NCBI GenBank assembly: GCA_001949185.1
Contig: BDGG01000011.1
Coordinates: 1,536,597-1,600,596 of the forward strand
DNA length: 64,000 bases
Reading direction: 5' to 3'
DNA from: Ramazzottius varieornatus
Taxonomy: Eukaryota; Animalia; Tardigrada
Shown here: in pieces, positions 7,874 to 17,200 of the stretch
Numbering within the stretch: the stretch's first letter is position 1
How the letters are laid out: each line of letters begins with the position of its first letter
The notes under the pieces: generated by a model
Database searches by the model: none
What the model was told of the DNA's origin: nothing
The model's input: only the letters and a program-made list of their open reading frames with translations
Program-made: the position numbers and the translations under genes

Positions 7874-8289
7874 AGAACGTCCTTACCTTCTGTACATATT
7901 TTGCTCTTTCATGTAATCATGTTTCTTTCTGAAGCTTATTTTTTACTGTTGCTTTTTAATTCTTTAGAATTTGTGTGTTGTAGAATGAAGTTCGAACTGT
8001 GAAATAAAATGAAAAATAAATGAAGAGCAGGAAGAGTTCGGTATGGGACTGGAAGTTTCCGCGGTTTTTGGTGCGCACTGGGCGCAAAGCTAGTCATACG
8101 ATTTTCCAGCATTGAAGAGCGGGAAACTTTCTGAGAGGGGACATTTTTTCTTGCGTTGTGAGATGCAGCAGATCTGAAGTTGCTATGGCTGATGCTGTAA
8201 GCAACTGTTGCTGTTGCGTATGTCGATCTATCGTATGGGTAGAGTACCGAGAGGAAATCTCGTACTGTGTGGAAATGTTTGCCGGAAAG

Positions 8290-11200
8290 ATGGCTAGAAC
8301 GGAATCTTCAGATTTAGTTCAATTCGTTCTTGTATTATTGCTTTTCCACGTGAGTGTTATCCAGCCATGTGTGACAACCTATACAAAGCCCACTGTTCTG
8401 GGATATGCGCAACTCAATACGATCTCGACGCAAATGTCAGCTTACGTTCACAAATCCCTTTTGTCAGGTACGTGTTGCTGCTTATCGGGATGATTTGGCC
8501 AGCTACCTGCATATCATCGTCCGCTGTGATATCTTCGTAAATTTACTTCCGGTGCGAAGTCATTTGGAAGCTCGGCAAGCAAATCCGATAAGGCTGTTTC
8601 CTTAGTGGCGCACATTGTTTTGCGTTTTTGGGGGGAAGTGTGCGCCACTTGGGAAAAATGATCTTGTTGAGGTTCTTTGCTCTTTTCAAGTGGCGCACGT
8701 CCTCGCTATTATTACTTGGAAGACTGCGCCACATGGAACAACGAACTTGTCCAGTTTGCTCGCCCAGCTCTAATTTTTGGCTTACGGTGGTTTGGTTCAT
8801 AGGTTATTCGTGGTTCCGAGCCGACTGGTACAACATCGTGGTCTACGTGACTATTTCCCTGGAAGGTATGACAGAGTTGCGCTACGACAAGTTCCGGAGC
8901 AACCAGACGTCAATGTATGCCACATTCACCGAAGAAGAGAATAGCTGGGCCGCCATGATGACCTGCGAGTCCCACATGCCTTCCAAGTACCCACGAGTTC
9001 CGCCGTTCCCTCTCCTACCTTATGACCCCGTCTCCAACAACCCCGCCACCAATAATACAGTCAGTTACGACTTGGCACTGCCGCTGTTTCTGTACCAAGT
9101 CGTGGTGGTCTTCAAGGTACCTGGGTTGACGACCTTGCAGTTGTCGAGGGACACCATGTTGAAAATCTTCACGGGCGTGTATACCAAGTGGAGTCAGATT
9201 CCAGCGTATGTGCAAAATTCTCGTGCTTCAGTGAAATTCACACTTGGGACGTCGACAAATGAATTCGCCCAGATCGTTTTCCAAAGTGGCGCACGACATT
9301 AGCCAGCGGCAATAATCACGTGCGCCACTTGGCTAAATTCATTACCAAAGCCCCAAATGCGATTAGAAAAAATCGATCAAAGTATGGATTGAAGGAAACT
9401 CAAGTAACAAGGATGTCGGTTTTTCAAGAATGAATCTCGGAAGCAACCCTTGGTATTTTGGGCGTGTCAAAGTTGACGAGTGTTTTGGCAGGACAGCATA
9501 TAGCGGGCAGACCATCACGGATCCCACCCAGTCCATCACCATATACATCATCAGCCAGCCCAACAAGATTAGCGATATCCTCTGTCGTTACGTGAAGAAC
9601 GCCGGGGCTAGCTGGACCAAAGTGGATATGGACGCCAAATGTGCCACCGGCGACATGTTCCCCCCATCCGCCACCAACCCCACTTTCAAGCGAGTCCGCT
9701 CGGCCGATGGCGCGCTGGCCTCCTTGACCAACACTCCGTATTCCATCACCTACACCAGTCGAGTCAACCTGATCGCATATGGCAAAGCTGTCACCACCGC
9801 TTCCCTTCAAAACGCCGCTGGAAACTACGTCAGTGCCAATTTTACCACGGTAAATTCAAATAAGAAGCAATTTTATTTTTTGGGTAGGAGTAGGTCGTAA
9901 AAGCTGAGTCCGGCAAGATGAAGTGCTCCGTAGAACTAGGACCTACTGCATGATGAATTCCTCTGGAAATTATTACAAGATTTATGGCTAGTTCAGATTC
10001 TACTTCTACTTTCAATTTCTGTTCTTTTTTCCTAGTTGAATGCAACGATCTACGGAAACAACATTACGGTGGCGGCCAACGGTACGGGTCTTGTGGACCT
10101 TCCCAACGCAACGGCCTACCCGCTGATCGGCATGAGCTTCATTACTGTGCGTTCGGCGCCCGATATCCGCAACGGTCCACCGGTGGATATCTACGTGGCT
10201 TCCGAAGTCCTTCGCTACTACCGTTGGGTCAACCGTGATCCTGCTGCTCGAGTCCGACTGTATAATTTCGAAGCGTTGCCCATTCCCAATGCAACCTACG
10301 ACGGCACCATCACCTTCATTAAGAACGAATGGTACGATGGTCGATGCTACCTTCACACGCGGGTTGATTCAGTTTCTTGGCGCAACTGTTGAGTACGCAT
10401 CACGACATTACTTTGGTCTGTCGCAGGTGGGCTACAATGCCCAACCAAGAGGACAACACAACCTACAGCGTGTGGGCCGAAATGGAGTACCAGTCCAGTC
10501 TGGAGCAGCTGACAGACTTTCAAGACATCTTTGTGATTTATGTCCTCCCACCCCTCATCGCTTTCATTTTTGTCGCCTACCTAACCTGGCGACTCATACT
10601 CTGGTTCATTCTTTATCGCAAAGTCCACCACGGAGTCTACCAAATCCCCGCTGAGGACATTGTCTTCATCGAGACTTCCAAAGAACGCTACCGATGCATG
10701 TTACATGGCCGAGCTTATTTGGACAGCCGACCCGAAAGCGAAATACCATTCTTAACCGGTACGACCATGGTAAAGTTTTCGCCCCTAACGGCATAGCATG
10801 AATGCCCTCGTCTGTTCCTATTAATCATTACTTCGAGCTCCGACAACCAACAGGATTTTCTTTGAAACTGGTCAAGTCTTTCTTTTTCACGCAGGTGAAT
10901 ATAAATCCGGTGTAGTGTTGCTTCGATCCTTCCCAATGGCCTTCAACACCTCCAGTCTCCGCGTCCGTCAAGAACTGATCCATATGCAGGAATGGCGTTG
11001 TCACAAGAACCTCGTCAAGTTCCTTGGAGTGGCGGAAGTGCGACGACAGCGGTACATCGTCTCCGAGCTGAGTTTGTTGGGCGACTTGCGAACACTCTTA
11101 AACAGCGTCAGTCAACAACATCTTCTGACGCAACCTGTCAGGTTCAACATGGCACGGGGTGTGGCCGAAGGTATGAGATACCTCCATGAACAAAAGATTG

Positions 11201-14200
11201 TCCATGGCAATCTGCGCAGTTCGTCGGTGTATGTCGAGTCGGATTGGTCGGTGAAGATCAGCGACTGGTAAGGTGAGAATTTCATCTGTCTATCTTTCAT
11301 CAGCCATTTTTCGGCAAAGGTTGAAGTGAAGTGAGTGGGTGCTTGTAGGGAGTACGCGCATTTGTACAGTCTGCAAGGGACGTTTGTGGCCAAGGAGCAG
11401 ACCTTCAAGAAGGTGCATAGGATACCCAAAACGCAACAGATACCACTGACCGTGCCGCACTTGTGGACGGCGCCGGAACTGATCAAGGCGGCTGTCGATC
11501 AGACGGGACTACTTCCTCAACGAACAGCCGACATCTACAGGTCAGCTTTTTCTTCAATGCATTATCGCAGGAAAATAGCCTTAAACTTATTTAGTATGGG
11601 GAATTAATTTGTCAGTAAATTCCAAGCCCACAGCTTTCCTTACTTCCGTCTGATCCGTCGTGCAGTATATTCAGTTGCATCCTAATTTACAGTAATATGC
11701 ACTTTCAAAAATGTTGAAACGTTCAGATTTTTGGTTTCAACAAGTTGAAATATTGTGAAATCCCCTGAAATTTCGAAAGTGGGCCAGTGGAAAAGAATGA
11801 GCTCAGAAAATGTTCGACCAAGTGAGGGCTTGATTTGGCTAGGCAGAAGCGATTATACAGTACTTTTGAGTTGTGACTGCTGGGTAGACATTACTTATGC
11901 TACGGACTGTCAAGAGTGGATTTCCATGGGGCTTTTCTACGATTGCAGTTACGGTATTATCTTTTACGAAATCCTGACCAGCTTCTACCCGTACAAATGG
12001 AAGCCTTCCAGTGGTCCTCCTTTGCCCATCATCATGCGCATTCTCAACCCTAAAAAGCCTCTCCGACCTCTCGACCTGGAGACCGCGGAAACGCTAGCTG
12101 AGGTCCCCGACTCCATGTTACGCCTGATGAAGTCCTGTTGGCACGTCAAACCTGAACGTCGTGTGACGTCCTACGGCATCAGCGTCATCCTGGCCGAAGT
12201 CCAGGCCGAGACGAAGCGGATGGCTGACTTGACCATCATCAACACTGACGTCTTCATTGAGAAGCAGAAAGCCGAGATCAAGAACTACAACTCTGACTTG
12301 AGGCAGCGGGTGCTGGATTTGAAGAGGGCCGGCGAAGAGTTCCAGACGCCGTTAGTGTATGAGCGGACCAGGAGTAAACTGCCAACCGAACCACAACTCA
12401 TTGAGAAAGCCTATATCATGCATATCACCATGGTCGAATACTCGGATCTGCTTGGTAAGATATCAACCTTTGCGCAAGCTTGTAGCCAATATCACCGTCA
12501 ACTTGCGCCACTTGGAAGAAAACAAAGCCGACAATTTCGTTTGCCGATGTGGCGCACGCTTCCGGCCAATTATACCAGTCTCGTGCGCCACTTGGAAATA
12601 CGACTTGTCAAATATGTTCGCCGAGCTGTCAGTTCCCTGTCAAAAAAGAGACTACCGGCATGTTGATCGGTACAAGGGAAGAGGGTCAGTAACGTGGTGA
12701 TATCATCCCTCCATTTTCTTGCAGGTGGGACGCACGGTGAGTCGGCCATAGCCTTGATTGAGCGTTTCCAGACCATGATCAATCAACACTTGCTGACCAT
12801 TCCCGATCCGAACATCTTCCGTCTTCATGCATCCGGTGACGACTGTACCATCCTCTGTGGTATCCCTGAAGGAGGTCTGCAGTATACCGACACCATCGCT
12901 ACCATGGCCTTCGACATTCTGACCATCACATGGAAAGCCGTCATGCTGGACATCGACATTGACCACATCAAGATCCGCATTGGCATTCACTGCGGCCCAG
13001 TCTTAGCTGGACTGTATGGCGGTGAACACTCCGAGTATACCATCATCGGAGATAACCGTGACATCGCTGAAGACATGGAGGTAAGCGCACCGTAATCCCT
13101 TGTGCCAACGTCACCAGTAGTGAGGACCTAGGCAGGCAGACTCGACAGCATCAGTTTGTCCAAGTGGCGCACACTTGCGGTCAATGACAGTGAGAGCGTG
13201 CGCCGCTTGGGAAAACAGTCTGGCCCAATACTTTTGCAAGTTGGCAGTTTCTTTTTCTTTTGTAGCGCCTTTCAGCGACCTTCCGAATTCTGATCAGTGA
13301 GGACTTTTTGGAAGACCTGAAGCACTTTAACGGCTACAGTTACATCCGCAACACGGACCGTAGCCGCTTTCATGAGAAGAAGACAACCTACTGGTTGATC
13401 GGTCGAGAGAACTATCCGTTCCAAGAGTCCCTGGACGAAATTCACACGGAATTTGGACGCATAACGGACGGTCGAGTTCCATTACCGCCCAAGAAGAAGG
13501 CCAAGTCGGCCATGGCTGGTGCCGCACCTGCCCATCTGGAACGCGTTCAAGCAAGACGAACGTCCATCGCAGCTTATGACGCTCAGCAGACGACCGAGAA
13601 TCGCGCCAGTATCTTGGAAAGAAGAAAACCTCGAGACAAACGCATCTCAAAAGGGTCAGTTATTTTCACAAATCAGTAAAGTTTTATCTGAAACCTCGGC
13701 AAACAAACTTTCGCAAGTGGTGCATGCTGCCAGCTAGCAACACCGCCAGCGTGCGCTACTTAGAGAAATGGTCCTGTCGAGTCGGTCCAAGTGGCGCATG
13801 TTATCATTGTTCCTGGCTAAAAGTATGCGCCACTTGGCAGAAAGATCATAACGATTTCTTGGATTATCGGTTTTAGATTTTGAAATCTATTCGTCGTTCT
13901 TTTTCGGTGTTTTAGAATGGACTTTAAGAATTCATTTTGTGATATGACGAAAAGGCATGTCATTATTTTGCAGGTCGTTGGGTCCAGAGGCGGTGCGGAA
14001 GTCTTTGAAATCCCACTCGATCGTTGAGCCTGACGACGGTGAGAGGGCCAGGATCGACGTAGTCAAACTACGCAACACCGAGCTGATCGTTGTGGACTTT
14101 GAGGACGATGACGAACACGCCTTAGCCATGGCCGATGCCCAACGACGCTTCCTGTACCCCGGCCCACCTGGTAGCGGCCTCTCCGTCATCAAAGAAGCCT

Positions 14201-17200
14201 CCAGCATCGGCTTGCAGTCTTCACGAAACAAGTCAGAGAGCACTCAACTCCAAGACAGCGAATCCATCCAGCAATCCCTCACAGCAACAGATCAACCCTC
14301 CTACCAATCAAGCTCAGTTTCGGACGCCGAAGCCCTACTGCATTCTCATTCAAAAGACCATTCGGCTTCAGTCATCGTGCAGATCTCCAAGGATTTATCT
14401 GACGTGCAGTCTTTCGTCACGCAGAGTTCGATGCCCGTTCAACCAGCACCAACTGTACCTTCAGTACGGTCTGTCCAAAAGCTCAATGCACCTATGAGAA
14501 TGACGGTCAGTGAGACCATCCGAGCACAACCCACCATCGTGGCGCACCCTAACCCCTTCACCTTGGCTGTTCAAAGAGTCAAGTCAGACACGACCTCGCT
14601 ACCCTTCCAGATGACGGTTAGCGAGACGGTGACCACTCAACCGACGGTGGTGTCACACCCCAACCCCTTCATACTGGCGGGGCTGATCAGTGGCAAACGA
14701 AGCGCCAAAGTGGCACCAGCACCGCAAGAAGTGACGTTGGAAATGCAGGAAAGACTACCGAGTATCAAAAGTGTCCCGTCTGTCCAAGTGAAAAATACAC
14801 CCGTCAGTCAAACTGAAATGGCCGATAATCAACCAACTCAACCGGCCAGTTTCCCAGCAAGGCAAATTACGGTGCAAGTGGAGCCTACCAATTGGCTGCA
14901 GCCAACTGGAAGCGTGGCTACGAATGAGAAAAGGCCGACGGTAAAGGATCGACTGTCGGTGCTTGAGAAACACAGTGCGCAAAGTCAGCAAAGTGATGGA
15001 AGTGCAGGTGCCTCGGTAGTAGCCAGTTGGTCAATACGCAGTCAAGCGGGTTCGACCAGGGCACTCGGAGGTGCCATCTCCGGAGTCTCCTCCATCAAAA
15101 GCTGGTCGACCATGCCTCGAGATGTTCAGTCGCAGTACAGCAACGACTTGGAAGCACCTTCTACCACTACGTTGACACATCCAACCAAGCACTCTCCCTC
15201 GTTTGACGCAAGCTCGCTGACGATGGCTGGCAACCAGCCGCGACTGCCTCAAGTCCATTCCCCAGGTCCATTCCCTGACGAGGCAGTCATCGGAGTAAAC
15301 TCGCTCAATACATATTCGACGTTACCCCAAATGCCTTCATCGAATGCAGCGACGGTTGGGACCTACACAGGTCGCAATAACATCGACGCACTTATGAACG
15401 CCTCCCCTCCAAGCGGCCCACAGCTTTATCCCAGTGTGGCTACTGTTGACTCGTCCGATGGCAGTATCAAAGGTGTGACGTCGGTCAAGACTTGGGCAAC
15501 GCTACCCGCAGCGCCTTCGACCAACCCAGGGACCGTCGGCTCGCTCTCTAATCAAACTGTCCTTAGCACCATCCCAACGGCCAACCAGCAAGCTTCATCA
15601 GACGTCGTCTCAAACTTTTTCGAAAACAGCAGAACGTTTTCCCAGCTGCATATGCCGGCAGTAACATCGGCCAGCTTACCCCAAATACCACCTGCCAACT
15701 TTGAAGCGATGAGCGACCTGAGGAGCCTCCAGCCAATATCCCGGGTCAGTGCCACTCAGTTGACTGAAAATAACCGTACGTTGTCAGAGATGGGCATATC
15801 TGCGGCCAGTCTACCTGGCTTGCCTTCGGTCAAGACAGAGATGGCTGAATGGCCAGCGAGTTACATGACTTCAAGTACTACATCAAGCAACGCCCTTCCT
15901 GCTGTGGCTTCTGTCAAGACATGGTCAACTTTGCCCTCAGCCTCTTCCGCAAACAAGCAGCCTTTGGGGGATATGGCCTTGTCGAATGCCATGATGAGAT
16001 CGAATGTGGGTATGTTGGGACCTCTAACGGATAGCAAGACGGACAGCCAGAGCATGTCATTGCAGAAGCAGCCGACCATCTTTGACGTGTCGAAACCCAT
16101 GCAGACACTGGGTGCCCCAATGACCGTTGCCGACATGGTGCCTTCGCAAGCTACGTTAGAGCACATCGTCCGAGTTCTCTCCACAAACGTACCTTCCGTC
16201 ACGGGTACAAGCGCGGACTCAAGAGAAGACACGAAGGCTAACCCTGCGCCAAGTGGAGAGACCGAAGGACCGGAGGAAGATAGTCCAGCGATAAATCTCC
16301 AAGTAATAAACCGACCGGAGGAAACAGCCGAGCCAGTGGATGACAGCAAAGAACGGGTGAAGAGCCAGTGGAGGTCTCTTTTGGACAAACAAGTCACTCG
16401 ACGTCGATCGTCCCTCCCCGCAGCCATCCCTCTTATCCTCCAACCCACGCAAGACAATAAGGTAGGTTTTCTCCTTTCTGATCGTCTTTAGAAGGCCGTC
16501 CACAGTTCAACATGGATATTGTTGTCTATGTTTTATAGACTGAGAGGGTATTGAGCACCTGGCGGGCTTTAGTCGACAAAGTACAGCAGCAACGTCGCCA
16601 GTCGCTGACTGGTACCTTACCTACTTTCACCGCAGACACACCGCTTGATCATGGAAACGAAGCTGCTGCGGTATCTGAAGGACCAGAAAGGCGACGGTAC
16701 TCTGCACCGGCCACTGTAATCATGCCGGCTGAAGCTTCCGATGTTGTGTCGTTAACACCAGCCAGGCCAGCAAGACAGTCTGAGGAAGATGGACTTTTGC
16801 CGTCCAGTACAGCCGATAGGCAATTTGTGGCTGGCAGGAAAGCTTCAATGGCAACTGAGGCGAACGGAAACGACGCTGGACCTTCATTGTCTGCAACCTC
16901 GCAAACGACGGTGGTGATCTTTCCCCAAGTCCAAGCTTTACCGACAATCCAACCAAGAAAAATTGAAGGCATGTTGCAGCCTGAAGCCACCGTGGTACTG
17001 GCAGCCCGAGGTGAGGCTGTAATGTTACCGTTCGTTACTGCGGAAGCAGCCGATGATGGACAATCAAGTACGGCCACACCCATGCCCATTGCTGGTCGGA
17101 GGGAATCTACGGATGGAAATGGCAGTATCAGTACCGCTGCTCGACCGTCTCTGGTTGGTCGAAAAGCCTCCGTGGCTCCGTCTGTTACCTTACCTGGAGC

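What the first reader, a model, noticed from the sequence alone, without database searches (positions are those of the whole stretch)
8290..13654. Animal single-pass receptor with a bacterial-type PstS phosphate-binding fold fused to a kinase-homology plus guanylyl cyclase module
Seen: exons 1-4 encode, in PstS order, VVVVFKVPGLTTLQLSRDTMLKIFTGVYTKW, ITIYII...ILCRYVKNAGASW, GALASLTNTPYSITY, ASLQNAAGNYV, AYPLIGMSFITV and EVLRYYRWV...ALPIP. A TM, KHD and cyclase follow. Established: these resemble ABC-transporter PstS (type 2 periplasmic-binding) motifs such as YNLPG..LKL....LAKIFLGKITKW, GVAAAVKQTPGAIGY, LQNKAGNFV and AYPI. Characterised animal receptor GCs use a type 1 ANF-receptor ectodomain instead. 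Inference: this is an uncharacterised class of small-solute or anion-sensing receptor built from a possibly horizontally acquired domain. It is intron-containing and lies next to DHX38, so it is not contamination. Similar fusions may already exist as unstudied database entries in other invertebrates; I cannot check.
Basis: partly seen in the sequence, partly recalled or inferred. Interest (0 to 1): 0.85.

Follow-up and report, generated by a model that had tools for sequence, protein, structure and literature searches.

The report
Tardigrade receptor with PstS-like outer domain
A tardigrade gene joins a bacterial-style phosphate-binding (PstS-like) outer domain to the membrane and inner parts of a receptor guanylyl cyclase. 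In this copy both the phosphate pocket and the cyclase active site are degenerate, so it is an unusual sensor-like receptor and not a simple phosphate-to-cGMP switch.

Summary
Window 8290-13679 (+) is an intact 10-exon gene of Ramazzottius varieornatus: all introns GT-AG, 3408 nt, 1135 codons. It encodes a signal peptide, a glycosylation-rich ectodomain, one TM helix, a receptor-GC-type kinase-homology domain and a class III cyclase-homology domain.

A PstS profile built from bacterial proteins only picks the exon-2 and exon-3 frames out of 1424 window frames (E 6.6e-8 and 8e-5). Their profile positions are colinear.

The genome has at least four more receptor paralogues of the same design, plus one ectodomain-only gene. 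In three paralogues a single open frame carries the TM helix together with the PstS C-lobe, the kinase N-lobe or both, so the fusion does not rest on predicted splicing. One paralogue exon folds as PstS (Foldseek E 2e-11).

This copy has lost the phosphate-contacting loop. Its cyclase lacks the catalytic Asn and Arg and both base-recognition residues, but keeps both metal-binding Asp. The paralogue on contig C3 keeps every phosphate contact.

RNA contigs confirm only the exon 8-9 junction. No paper describing such a fusion was found.

The scan had already noted paralogues on other DNA of this genome. One note claims the design also occurs in molluscs, annelids and priapulids. I could not test that.

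The parts
8290..8467 (+). Exon 1: start codon and signal-peptide-like hydrophobic stretch (about 8317-8373), then the start of the ectodomain. An in-frame ATG at 8276 is an alternative start.
   Evidence: 19-residue Kyte-Doolittle hydropathy mean 2.13 from residue 10; donor GTacgt.
8803..9205 (+). Exon 2: PstS-like N-lobe with the 'FKVPGL...IFTG.YTKW' motif. An in-phase alternative acceptor at 8866 would remove the strand that aligns by eye with PstS beta-2.
   Evidence: TIGR00975 E 2.8e-4, model 63-113. Bacterial-only PstS profile E 6.6e-8. phmmer against cyanobacterial PstS P0005 E 2.4e-6.
9492..9849 (+). Exon 3: central PstS-like part. The former phosphate loop is at 9550-9570, where R135/D137/S139/G140/T141 read I/Q/N/K/I.
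   Evidence: TIGR00975 E 7e-5, model 169-226. Profile E 1.3e-8. Residue mapping. 78.6% identical to P0001 from another tardigrade-like source, but only 44% across the loop.
10036..10331 (+). Exon 4: PstS-like C-lobe ('AYPL...', '...RYYRW') with 5 N-glycosylation sequons.
   Evidence: Profile E 0.054, model 271-319, colinear. 28% identical to the C2b paralogue over 71 aa, E 3e-5. Two differences from Logan fragment P0043 over the 87 aligned residues up to the donor at 10331, then two in the next seven.
10427..10758 (+). Exon 5: end of the ectodomain, TM helix (about 10527-10616) followed by basic residues, and the juxtamembrane segment.
   Evidence: 19-residue Kyte-Doolittle hydropathy mean 2.54. 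Homologous to L018 2516-2692, which lies in one open frame with the KHD N-lobe.
10895..11267 (+). Exon 6: kinase-homology domain, with the HGNLRS pseudo-catalytic loop at 11203-11220.
   Evidence: PF07714 E 3.8e-19. PDB kinase alignments.
11349..11540 (+). Exon 7: kinase-homology domain, activation-segment region.
   Evidence: tblastn to paralogues, E 1.7e-8. GT-AG and phase.
11949..12454 (+). Exon 8: KHD C-lobe, linker helix and the start of the cyclase-homology domain. The first metal-binding Asp (12445-12447) is kept.
   Evidence: Pkinase E 0.0022. 36% identical to L018 over 170 aa, E 3e-26. The junction 12454|12725 is seen in a contig of run X1.
12725..13080 (+). Exon 9: cyclase-homology core. 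Specificity Glu/Lys reads His (12826-12828). The second metal Asp is kept (12838-12840). Catalytic Asn reads Asp (13060-13062) and catalytic Arg reads Asp (13072-13074).
   Evidence: PF00211 E 8.2e-13. Residue-level alignments to Rv1625c-type adenylate cyclase and soluble GC beta-1.
13266..13679 (+). Exon 10: end of the cyclase-homology domain, a basic C-terminal tail and the stop codon TAA at 13677-13679.
   Evidence: tblastn to L005 and L018, E about 2e-7. RNA-guess contigs cover 13338-13633.

Best explanation
The region is one gene for a single-pass type I membrane receptor of the tardigrade Ramazzottius varieornatus. The intracellular half (kinase-homology domain, linker helix, class III cyclase-homology domain) comes from the animal receptor guanylyl cyclase family. 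The ectodomain is a Venus-flytrap domain homologous to bacterial PstS, not the usual ANF-receptor domain. It belongs to a family of at least five such receptor genes plus one ectodomain-only gene in this genome.

Shown: the architecture, the PstS homology, the paralogue family, loss of the canonical phosphate-contacting residues in this copy, and loss of the catalytic Asn and Arg and of the base-recognition residues in the cyclase domain of all five receptors. This copy keeps both metal-binding Asp and the Arg of the IRIGIH motif.

Inferred: the protein cannot make cGMP as a homodimer and does not bind phosphate in the PstS manner. It most likely acts as a regulatory or 'alpha-like' subunit. 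Closure or re-orientation of its flytrap ectodomain would be passed through the TM, KHD and helix to a dimeric cyclase-homology module. That module is either half of an asymmetric heterodimer with a partner supplying Asn, Arg, Glu and Cys, or it is non-catalytic.
For: Gene model: 10 exons, all GT-AG, phases consistent, 3408 nt. Domains.

Paralogues with the same order of parts on one strand: C1 (L005), C3 (L017), C2a (L018), C2c (L020).

Physical linkage without splicing:
- L017 frame 7962-6976 has a PstS C-lobe hit (TIGR00975 model 203-300, E 0.0026), a TM helix and a kinase N-lobe-like segment. The N-lobe is read by eye; Pfam found no family in that frame.
- L018 frame 2468-2947 holds the TM helix plus the KHD N-lobe, and matches window exons 5 and 6 in one frame.

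Fold: AlphaFold2 model of P0003, the C2a exon (pLDDT 71). The top 49 ranked Foldseek PDB hits are all phosphate-binding proteins, best E 2.1e-11. ESM Atlas TM 0.67-0.76 to PBP_like_2 clusters.

Pocket: 29 bacterial PstS keep S38, R135, S139, G140 and T141 in every sequence. C3 keeps all the contacts and the window copy keeps none of the loop.

Cyclase: the motif reads GDNRDIAEDME where canonical cyclases have GD(T/A)VN.ASRME. The other four paralogues also lack Asn and Arg (read). Canonical GC genes of the same genome keep the motifs. One of them, C2:455738, is 'beta-like': it has E, C, N and R but lacks the first Asp.

Constraint: exon 3 is 78.6% identical to P0001, and exon 4 shows two differences in its first 87 aligned residues against P0043.

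Expression: the exon 8-9 junction appears in a contig of run X1, guessed to be RNA.
Against: No read or contig joins the ectodomain exons to the KHD exons of this gene. The RNA-guess runs cover only 11398-13633, and some of their contigs run through introns 7 and 8, so they may be pre-mRNA or DNA.

The public annotation of paralogue C2a stops after its first exon (RvY_04000, 288 aa). Annotators therefore did not see one long gene there.

The heterodimer idea rests only on complementary residues. No binding or activity test was made.

The N-lobe pocket positions (T10, S38, D56) of the window copy could not be aligned with confidence.

The full spliced protein was not searched or folded, because the joined step was left out.
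Confidence: 0.65

Rival explanations
1. It is a working phosphate- or anion-activated homodimeric receptor guanylyl cyclase. Ligand binding in the PstS pocket switches on cGMP synthesis.
For: The architecture is that of a receptor GC. The C3 paralogue keeps a complete phosphate pocket. This copy keeps both metal-binding Asp.
Against: The phosphate loop reads I/Q/N/K/I in place of R/D/S/G/T and is only 44% conserved between orthologues. The catalytic Asn and Arg are both Asp, and the E/C specificity pair reads H/T. Established knowledge of class III cyclases says a homodimer needs all of these residues in each chain.
Confidence: 0.07
2. Two genes lie here: a secreted or anchored PstS-like protein (exons 1-4) and a separate truncated KHD-cyclase protein.
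For: RNA-guess contigs cover only the 3' half. An ectodomain-only paralogue exists: L019 has no KHD or cyclase within 7.5 kb. The annotation of C2a ends after exon 1.
Against: Exon 4 has no in-frame stop before its donor, and exon 5 continues in phase into the TM helix. Orthologue identity falls right after the donor at 10331. In L017, L018 and L020 single open frames carry the TM helix together with the PstS C-lobe, the kinase N-lobe or both. A KHD-cyclase protein without signal peptide and TM helix would lack the topology seen in all four other paralogues.
Confidence: 0.08
3. It is a decaying, functionless duplicate of a phosphate-sensing receptor: intact by chance but no longer used.
For: Both classical functional sites are degenerate. 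RNA support is low and patchy. The ectodomain is so diverged that paralogues are barely detectable pairwise.
Against: There are 1135 codons without a stop or frameshift and ten good splice sites. Exon 3 is 85% identical to a distant orthologue outside the loop, and exon 4 is nearly unchanged in a close one. The same Asn and Arg loss is shared by all five paralogues. That argues for a long-maintained non-catalytic domain rather than recent decay.
Confidence: 0.12
4. It is bacterial contamination or an assembly chimera.
For: The nearest non-tardigrade relatives of the ectodomain are bacterial.
Against: The PstS-like part contains introns. Five further loci carry the domain on four large scaffolds. 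DNA contigs of run X5 match with introns. The neighbouring genes are typical animal genes. The published assembly removed low-coverage scaffolds (PMC5034306).
Confidence: 0.01

Closest known systems
Animal receptor guanylyl cyclases (NPR1/GC-A, GC-C, C. elegans GCY family)
   Same: Single-pass type I topology. Kinase-homology domain with the HGNL(K/R)S loop, a linker helix and a C-terminal class III cyclase domain. C. elegans GCYs sense ions and small solutes directly (established knowledge).
   Different: The ectodomain is a type 2 PstS-like fold, not the type 1 ANF-receptor fold. The cyclase lacks the catalytic Asn and Arg and the E/C specificity residues.
Bacterial phosphate-binding protein PstS (TIGR00975, PF12849; PDB 1ixh, 2z22)
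   Same: Homologous fold and colinear motifs. The C3 paralogue keeps T10, S38, D56, R135, D137, S139, G140 and T141.
   Different: It is tethered to a membrane receptor, split by introns, rich in glycosylation sequons and has no ABC transporter context. This copy has lost the phosphate loop. Exon scores (about 20 bits) are far below the family cut-off of 205 bits.
Soluble guanylyl cyclase alpha/beta and mammalian adenylyl cyclase C1/C2 (asymmetric heterodimers)
   Same: One chain gives the two metal-binding Asp and the other gives Asn, Arg and the base-recognition residues. The window protein has the first set only. A gene with the second set exists in the genome.
   Different: No evidence that these tardigrade proteins pair. 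The known heterodimers are not PstS-linked receptors.
Venus kinase receptors, trypanosome receptor adenylyl cyclases and BvgS-type sensor kinases
   Same: A periplasmic-binding-protein (flytrap) ectodomain is fused through one TM helix to a signalling enzyme (established knowledge). A Venus kinase receptor appears among the PDB kinase hits.
   Different: Those use other binding-protein families and have active kinase or cyclase outputs.
DING / human phosphate-binding protein
   Same: PstS-superfamily proteins reported from eukaryotic tissues. They are weak PDB hits to the paralogues.
   Different: Genes for DING proteins have not been found in eukaryotic genomes (PMC2225411). Here the gene is in the genome, has introns, and is closer to classical PstS than to DING.

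Membership tests
Receptor guanylyl cyclase | Signal peptide and a single TM helix | tested here: met
   Hydropathy maxima of 2.13 (exon 1) and 2.54 (exon 5), with basic residues after the TM helix.
Receptor guanylyl cyclase | ANF-receptor (type 1 periplasmic-binding) ectodomain | tested here: not met
   No PF01094 hit on any ectodomain exon. The ectodomain scores as PstS instead.
Receptor guanylyl cyclase | Kinase-homology domain with a degenerate catalytic loop (HGNL.S) | tested here: met
   PF07714 E 3.8e-19. HGNLRS at 11203-11220.
Receptor guanylyl cyclase | Class III cyclase domain at the C-terminus | tested here: met
   PF00211 E 8.2e-13. PDB cyclase hits down to E 5e-8.
Receptor guanylyl cyclase | Complete catalytic set in each chain (2 Asp, Arg, Asn, Arg, Glu/Cys) | tested here: not met
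   Asn and Arg both read Asp. Glu reads His and Cys reads Thr. Both metal-binding Asp and the first Arg are kept.
Receptor guanylyl cyclase | cGMP synthesis on ligand binding | not testable with these tools
   Needs an enzyme assay.
PstS phosphate-binding protein (TIGR00975) | Score over the family cut-off (205 bits) | tested here: not met
   20-22 bits per exon. The whole spliced protein was not scored because the joined step was left out.
PstS phosphate-binding protein (TIGR00975) | Type 2 binding-protein fold of PstS | tested here: inconclusive
   Met for paralogue exon P0003 (Foldseek E 2e-11). The window copy was not folded because its domain is split over four exons. Its homology is shown by profile only.
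PstS phosphate-binding protein (TIGR00975) | Phosphate-contacting residues (T10, S38, D56, R135, S139, G140, T141) | tested here: not met
   The loop residues read I, N, K and I in the window copy. The N-lobe positions are not alignable. The C3 paralogue keeps all of them.
PstS phosphate-binding protein (TIGR00975) | Partner ABC transporter PstCAB | not tested
   Not expected in an animal. No search was made.

The most novel reading that the evidence does not exclude
The tardigrade PstS-type receptors form a heteromeric sensing system. A copy with an intact phosphate pocket (C3) would be an animal cell-surface phosphate sensor. Diverged copies such as this one would be tuning or 'alpha-like' subunits that complete an asymmetric cyclase site, or they would signal without catalysis. 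This would be a route to extracellular phosphate or anion sensing in animals that has not been described.
Probability: 0.2. Interest if true: 0.85.

Novelty: new variant of a known kind. Interest (0 to 1): 0.6.

Why it matters
How animal cells sense extracellular phosphate and other small anions is poorly understood. Receptor guanylyl cyclases are known only with ANF-type ectodomains.

A gene family that puts a PstS-type flytrap on the receptor-GC chassis shows that animals have re-used a bacterial nutrient-binding fold as a receptor head. It also gives testable candidates. The C3 copy can be tested for phosphate binding. This copy shows what happens to such a receptor when both classical sites are remodelled.

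The finding bears on the long-running puzzle of eukaryotic PstS-like (DING) proteins, whose genes were never found. It also bears on the noted but unexplained expansion of guanylate cyclases in R. varieornatus (PMC5034306).

This particular copy is the less informative member, because both sites are degenerate. The scan had already met its paralogues.

Tried and rejected
- The search of protein representatives with exon 3 gave only a 111-aa orthologue fragment and a chance bacterial repeat protein.
- The search for homologous proteins with the C2a exon, with an ectodomain alignment and with a PstS-C-lobe/TM/KHD alignment returned only tardigrade-like fragments and bacterial PstS. Its length filter excludes 1000-aa receptors, so this says nothing about other animal phyla.
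- An ESM Atlas search with the bridging frame gave only a weak KHD lead, score 0.76.
- Two related-loci runs failed for lack of conserved columns. A third, with a KHD alignment on metagenome contigs, gave 80 kinase-like loci. None held a PstS-like frame. This is a blank, not a negative.
- RNA check: low, patchy coverage and only one junction seen.
- Six paper searches and two papers read found no PstS-cyclase fusion. No supplementary files of PMC5034306 were held as text.
- The short C3 exon was misplaced on a 6.4-length branch in the tree and is not interpreted.
All searches were exon by exon, by reference.


Full report
**What is there**

The + strand between 8290 and 13679 carries ten open segments. 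They join through GT-AG introns of 81-408 nt with consistent phases.

- The exons are 8290-8467, 8803-9205, 9492-9849, 10036-10331, 10427-10758, 10895-11267, 11349-11540, 11949-12454, 12725-13080 and 13266-13679.
- They sum to 3408 nt, which is 1135 codons plus TAA.
- None of the seven split codons is a stop, and each exon is stop-free in frame.
- I checked this exon by exon.
- Two details stay open. The start codon is either 8290 or the in-frame ATG at 8276. There is also an in-phase alternative acceptor at 8866. I prefer 8803 because it keeps the strand that aligns by eye with PstS beta-2.

**Organism**

The assembly has 55.8 Mb in 200 contigs. A paralogue exon is letter-for-letter the NCBI protein GAU91813.1 (RvY_04000) of Ramazzottius varieornatus. 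The genome paper reports 55.8 Mb in 199 scaffolds. It also notes an unexplained expansion of guanylate cyclases (PMC5034306). I found at least 158 exon-level matches to PF00211 in the genome.

**Domains of the window gene**

- Exon 1 has a signal-peptide-like hydrophobic stretch, and exon 5 a TM helix followed by basic residues.
- Nine of the ten N-x-S/T sequons lie in exons 2-5, before the TM helix.
- Exon 6 hits PF07714 at E 3.8e-19 and has the HGNLRS loop typical of receptor-GC kinase-homology domains.
- Exon 9 hits PF00211 at E 8.2e-13.
- Exons 2 and 3 each hit the PstS equivalog TIGR00975 at colinear model positions, E 2.8e-4 and 7e-5.

As a chance control I built a profile from 29 bacterial PstS sequences only. 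I scored all 1424 open frames of 30 aa or more in the 64-kb window. The exon-2 and exon-3 frames came first (E 6.6e-8 and 8e-5). The exon-4 frame was fourth (E 1.4), at colinear model positions. With the tardigrade paralogues added to the profile, the three are the top three (E 6.3e-8, 1.3e-8 and 0.054).

**A family, not a one-off**

A TIGR00975 scan of the whole genome found six loci.

- Four besides the window show PstS-like exons, a TM helix, a KHD and a cyclase domain in that order on one strand. They are C1:4.378 Mb (L005), C3:4.465 Mb (L017), C2:1.751 Mb (L018) and C2:7.996 Mb (L020).
- Their PstS scores are much stronger, down to E 3.4e-19 on a single exon.
- The sixth locus, C2:3.450 Mb (L019), has the ectodomain only. 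No KHD or cyclase lies within 7.5 kb downstream.
- The window gene's intracellular half is closest to L018: 54% over part of exon 6, 36% over exon 8 and 39-44% over exon 9.

**Is it one gene?**

RNA support is thin. The runs guessed to be RNA cover only 11398-13633. Some of their contigs run through introns 7 and 8. One contig joins 12454 to 12725, which is exactly my exon 8-9 junction. Run X5 is evidently DNA. No transcript links the ectodomain to the KHD of this gene.

The paralogues supply that link without any splicing.

- L017 frame 7962-6976 holds a PstS C-lobe hit (model 203-300), a TM helix and a kinase N-lobe-like segment. The N-lobe is read by eye; Pfam found no family in that frame.
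- L018 frame 2468-2947 holds the TM helix, the juxtamembrane part and the KHD N-lobe. It matches window exons 5 and 6 in a single frame, which also validates that junction.
- The Logan fragment P0043 shows two differences from exon 4 over 87 residues up to the donor at 10331, and two in the next seven.

The public annotation of L018 ends after its first exon (288 aa). The fusion is therefore hidden in at least one database entry.

**Fold**

That 288-aa exon (P0003) was modelled with a 31-row alignment (pLDDT 71, pTM 0.67). The top 49 ranked Foldseek PDB hits are all phosphate-binding proteins, the best being E. coli and Yersinia PstS at E 2e-11. The ESM Atlas model of the same protein matches PBP_like_2 clusters at TM 0.67-0.76. 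The window copy's ectodomain is split over four exons and was not folded.

**The pocket**

In 29 bacterial PstS sequences, S38, R135, S139, G140 and T141 (E. coli numbering) are invariant. D56 and D137 are each kept in 28 of 29.

- The C3 paralogue keeps T10, S38, D56, R135, D137, S139, G140 and T141. It is a credible phosphate binder.
- In the window gene the loop reads I, Q, N, K, I at R135, D137, S139, G140, T141.
- The other paralogues keep it only in part.
- Against the orthologue fragment P0001, exon 3 is 78.6% identical overall. It is 44% identical in the 16 residues over the former loop and 85% elsewhere.

The old pocket is thus either relaxed or fast-evolving in this copy.

**The cyclase**

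Residue-level alignments to Rv1625c-type adenylate cyclase and to soluble GC beta-1 give the following for the window protein.

- Both metal-binding Asp and the Arg of IRIGIH are kept.
- The catalytic Asn and Arg are both Asp.
- The specificity positions read His and Thr.

Reading the same motifs by eye in the other four paralogues shows that all lack Asn and Arg, and most lack one or both metal-binding Asp as well. Canonical cyclase genes in the same genome keep the motifs. One of them, C2:455738, keeps Glu, Cys, Asn and Arg but lacks the first Asp. From what is established for class III cyclases, the window protein cannot form a symmetric active homodimer. It could contribute the metal half of an asymmetric site, as soluble GC alpha and adenylyl cyclase C1 do. 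That pairing is an inference and was not tested.

**Origin**

The nearest non-tardigrade relatives found are bacterial PstS at about 31-34% identity. The named ones include Leptolyngbyaceae and Anabaena. In a tree of 39 rows, six tardigrade rows form one group (support 91/80) beside cyanobacterial-type PstS. Their branches are very long, and the bacterial sample was chosen by shared words with the query, so neither donor nor date can be named.

The searches could not see proteins longer than about 500 aa, so other animal phyla were not examined. My attempts to test this were blank for technical reasons. If that note is right, the acquisition is old and not tardigrade-specific.

**Literature**

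Six full-text searches found no paper describing a PstS-type ectodomain on a cyclase-type receptor in any animal.

**Verdict**

- The architecture is real and unusual.
- This copy is a diverged member whose two classical functional sites are both degenerate. 'Anion-sensing receptor guanylyl cyclase' overstates it.
- The best reading is a conserved, low-expressed regulatory or heteromeric receptor subunit.
- The scan had already found paralogues of this gene on other DNA of the same genome.

Noticed in passing
window 8640-8698, 9282-9332, 12503-12595, 13160-13210, 13787-13837 and elsewhere: The 13-mer GTGCGCCACTTGG (1 mismatch allowed) occurs 23 times in the window against 0.02 expected. It often occurs as inverted pairs about 25-35 nt apart. 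Ten copies lie in introns 1, 2, 8 and 9 and just after the stop of this gene. Contigs from many other loci pile up on these spots. It looks like a small MITE-like dispersed repeat.
   Followed up: partly
L018:867-1733 (G000:C2:1750866-1751732): The public protein RvY_04000 (GAU91813.1, 288 aa, 'PBP domain-containing protein') is only the first exon of a PstS-TM-KHD-cyclase receptor, read through its splice donor to a stop. The database entry therefore hides the fusion.
   Followed up: partly
L019:7534-9013 (G000:C2, about 3.449-3.451 Mb, minus strand): A PstS-like ectodomain gene closest to the C2c receptor's ectodomain (40% over 116 aa). No TM-KHD-cyclase part lies within 7.5 kb downstream. 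It may be a secreted or anchored stand-alone copy.
   Followed up: partly
L017 (G000:C3:4456500-4466499, minus strand): A paralogue with every phosphate-contacting residue of E. coli PstS kept, but with a cyclase domain lacking both metal-binding Asp, Asn and Arg. It is the best candidate for a real phosphate-binding receptor in this genome.
   Followed up: partly
L021 (G000:C2:455300-456900): A cyclase gene with Glu, Cys, Asn and Arg kept but the first metal-binding Asp lost ('beta-like'). It has the complementary half-site to the window protein.
   Followed up: no
window 13957-16491 (+): An 844-aa open frame rich in Ser, Thr, Pro and Gln lies directly downstream. It has no Pfam family at E 0.01 or below.
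   Followed up: no
window 11398-11948 and 12450-12716: Contigs of runs guessed to be RNA run straight through introns 7 and 8. They could be unspliced pre-mRNA, intron retention or DNA carry-over. The exon 8-9 junction is seen in one run only.
   Followed up: no
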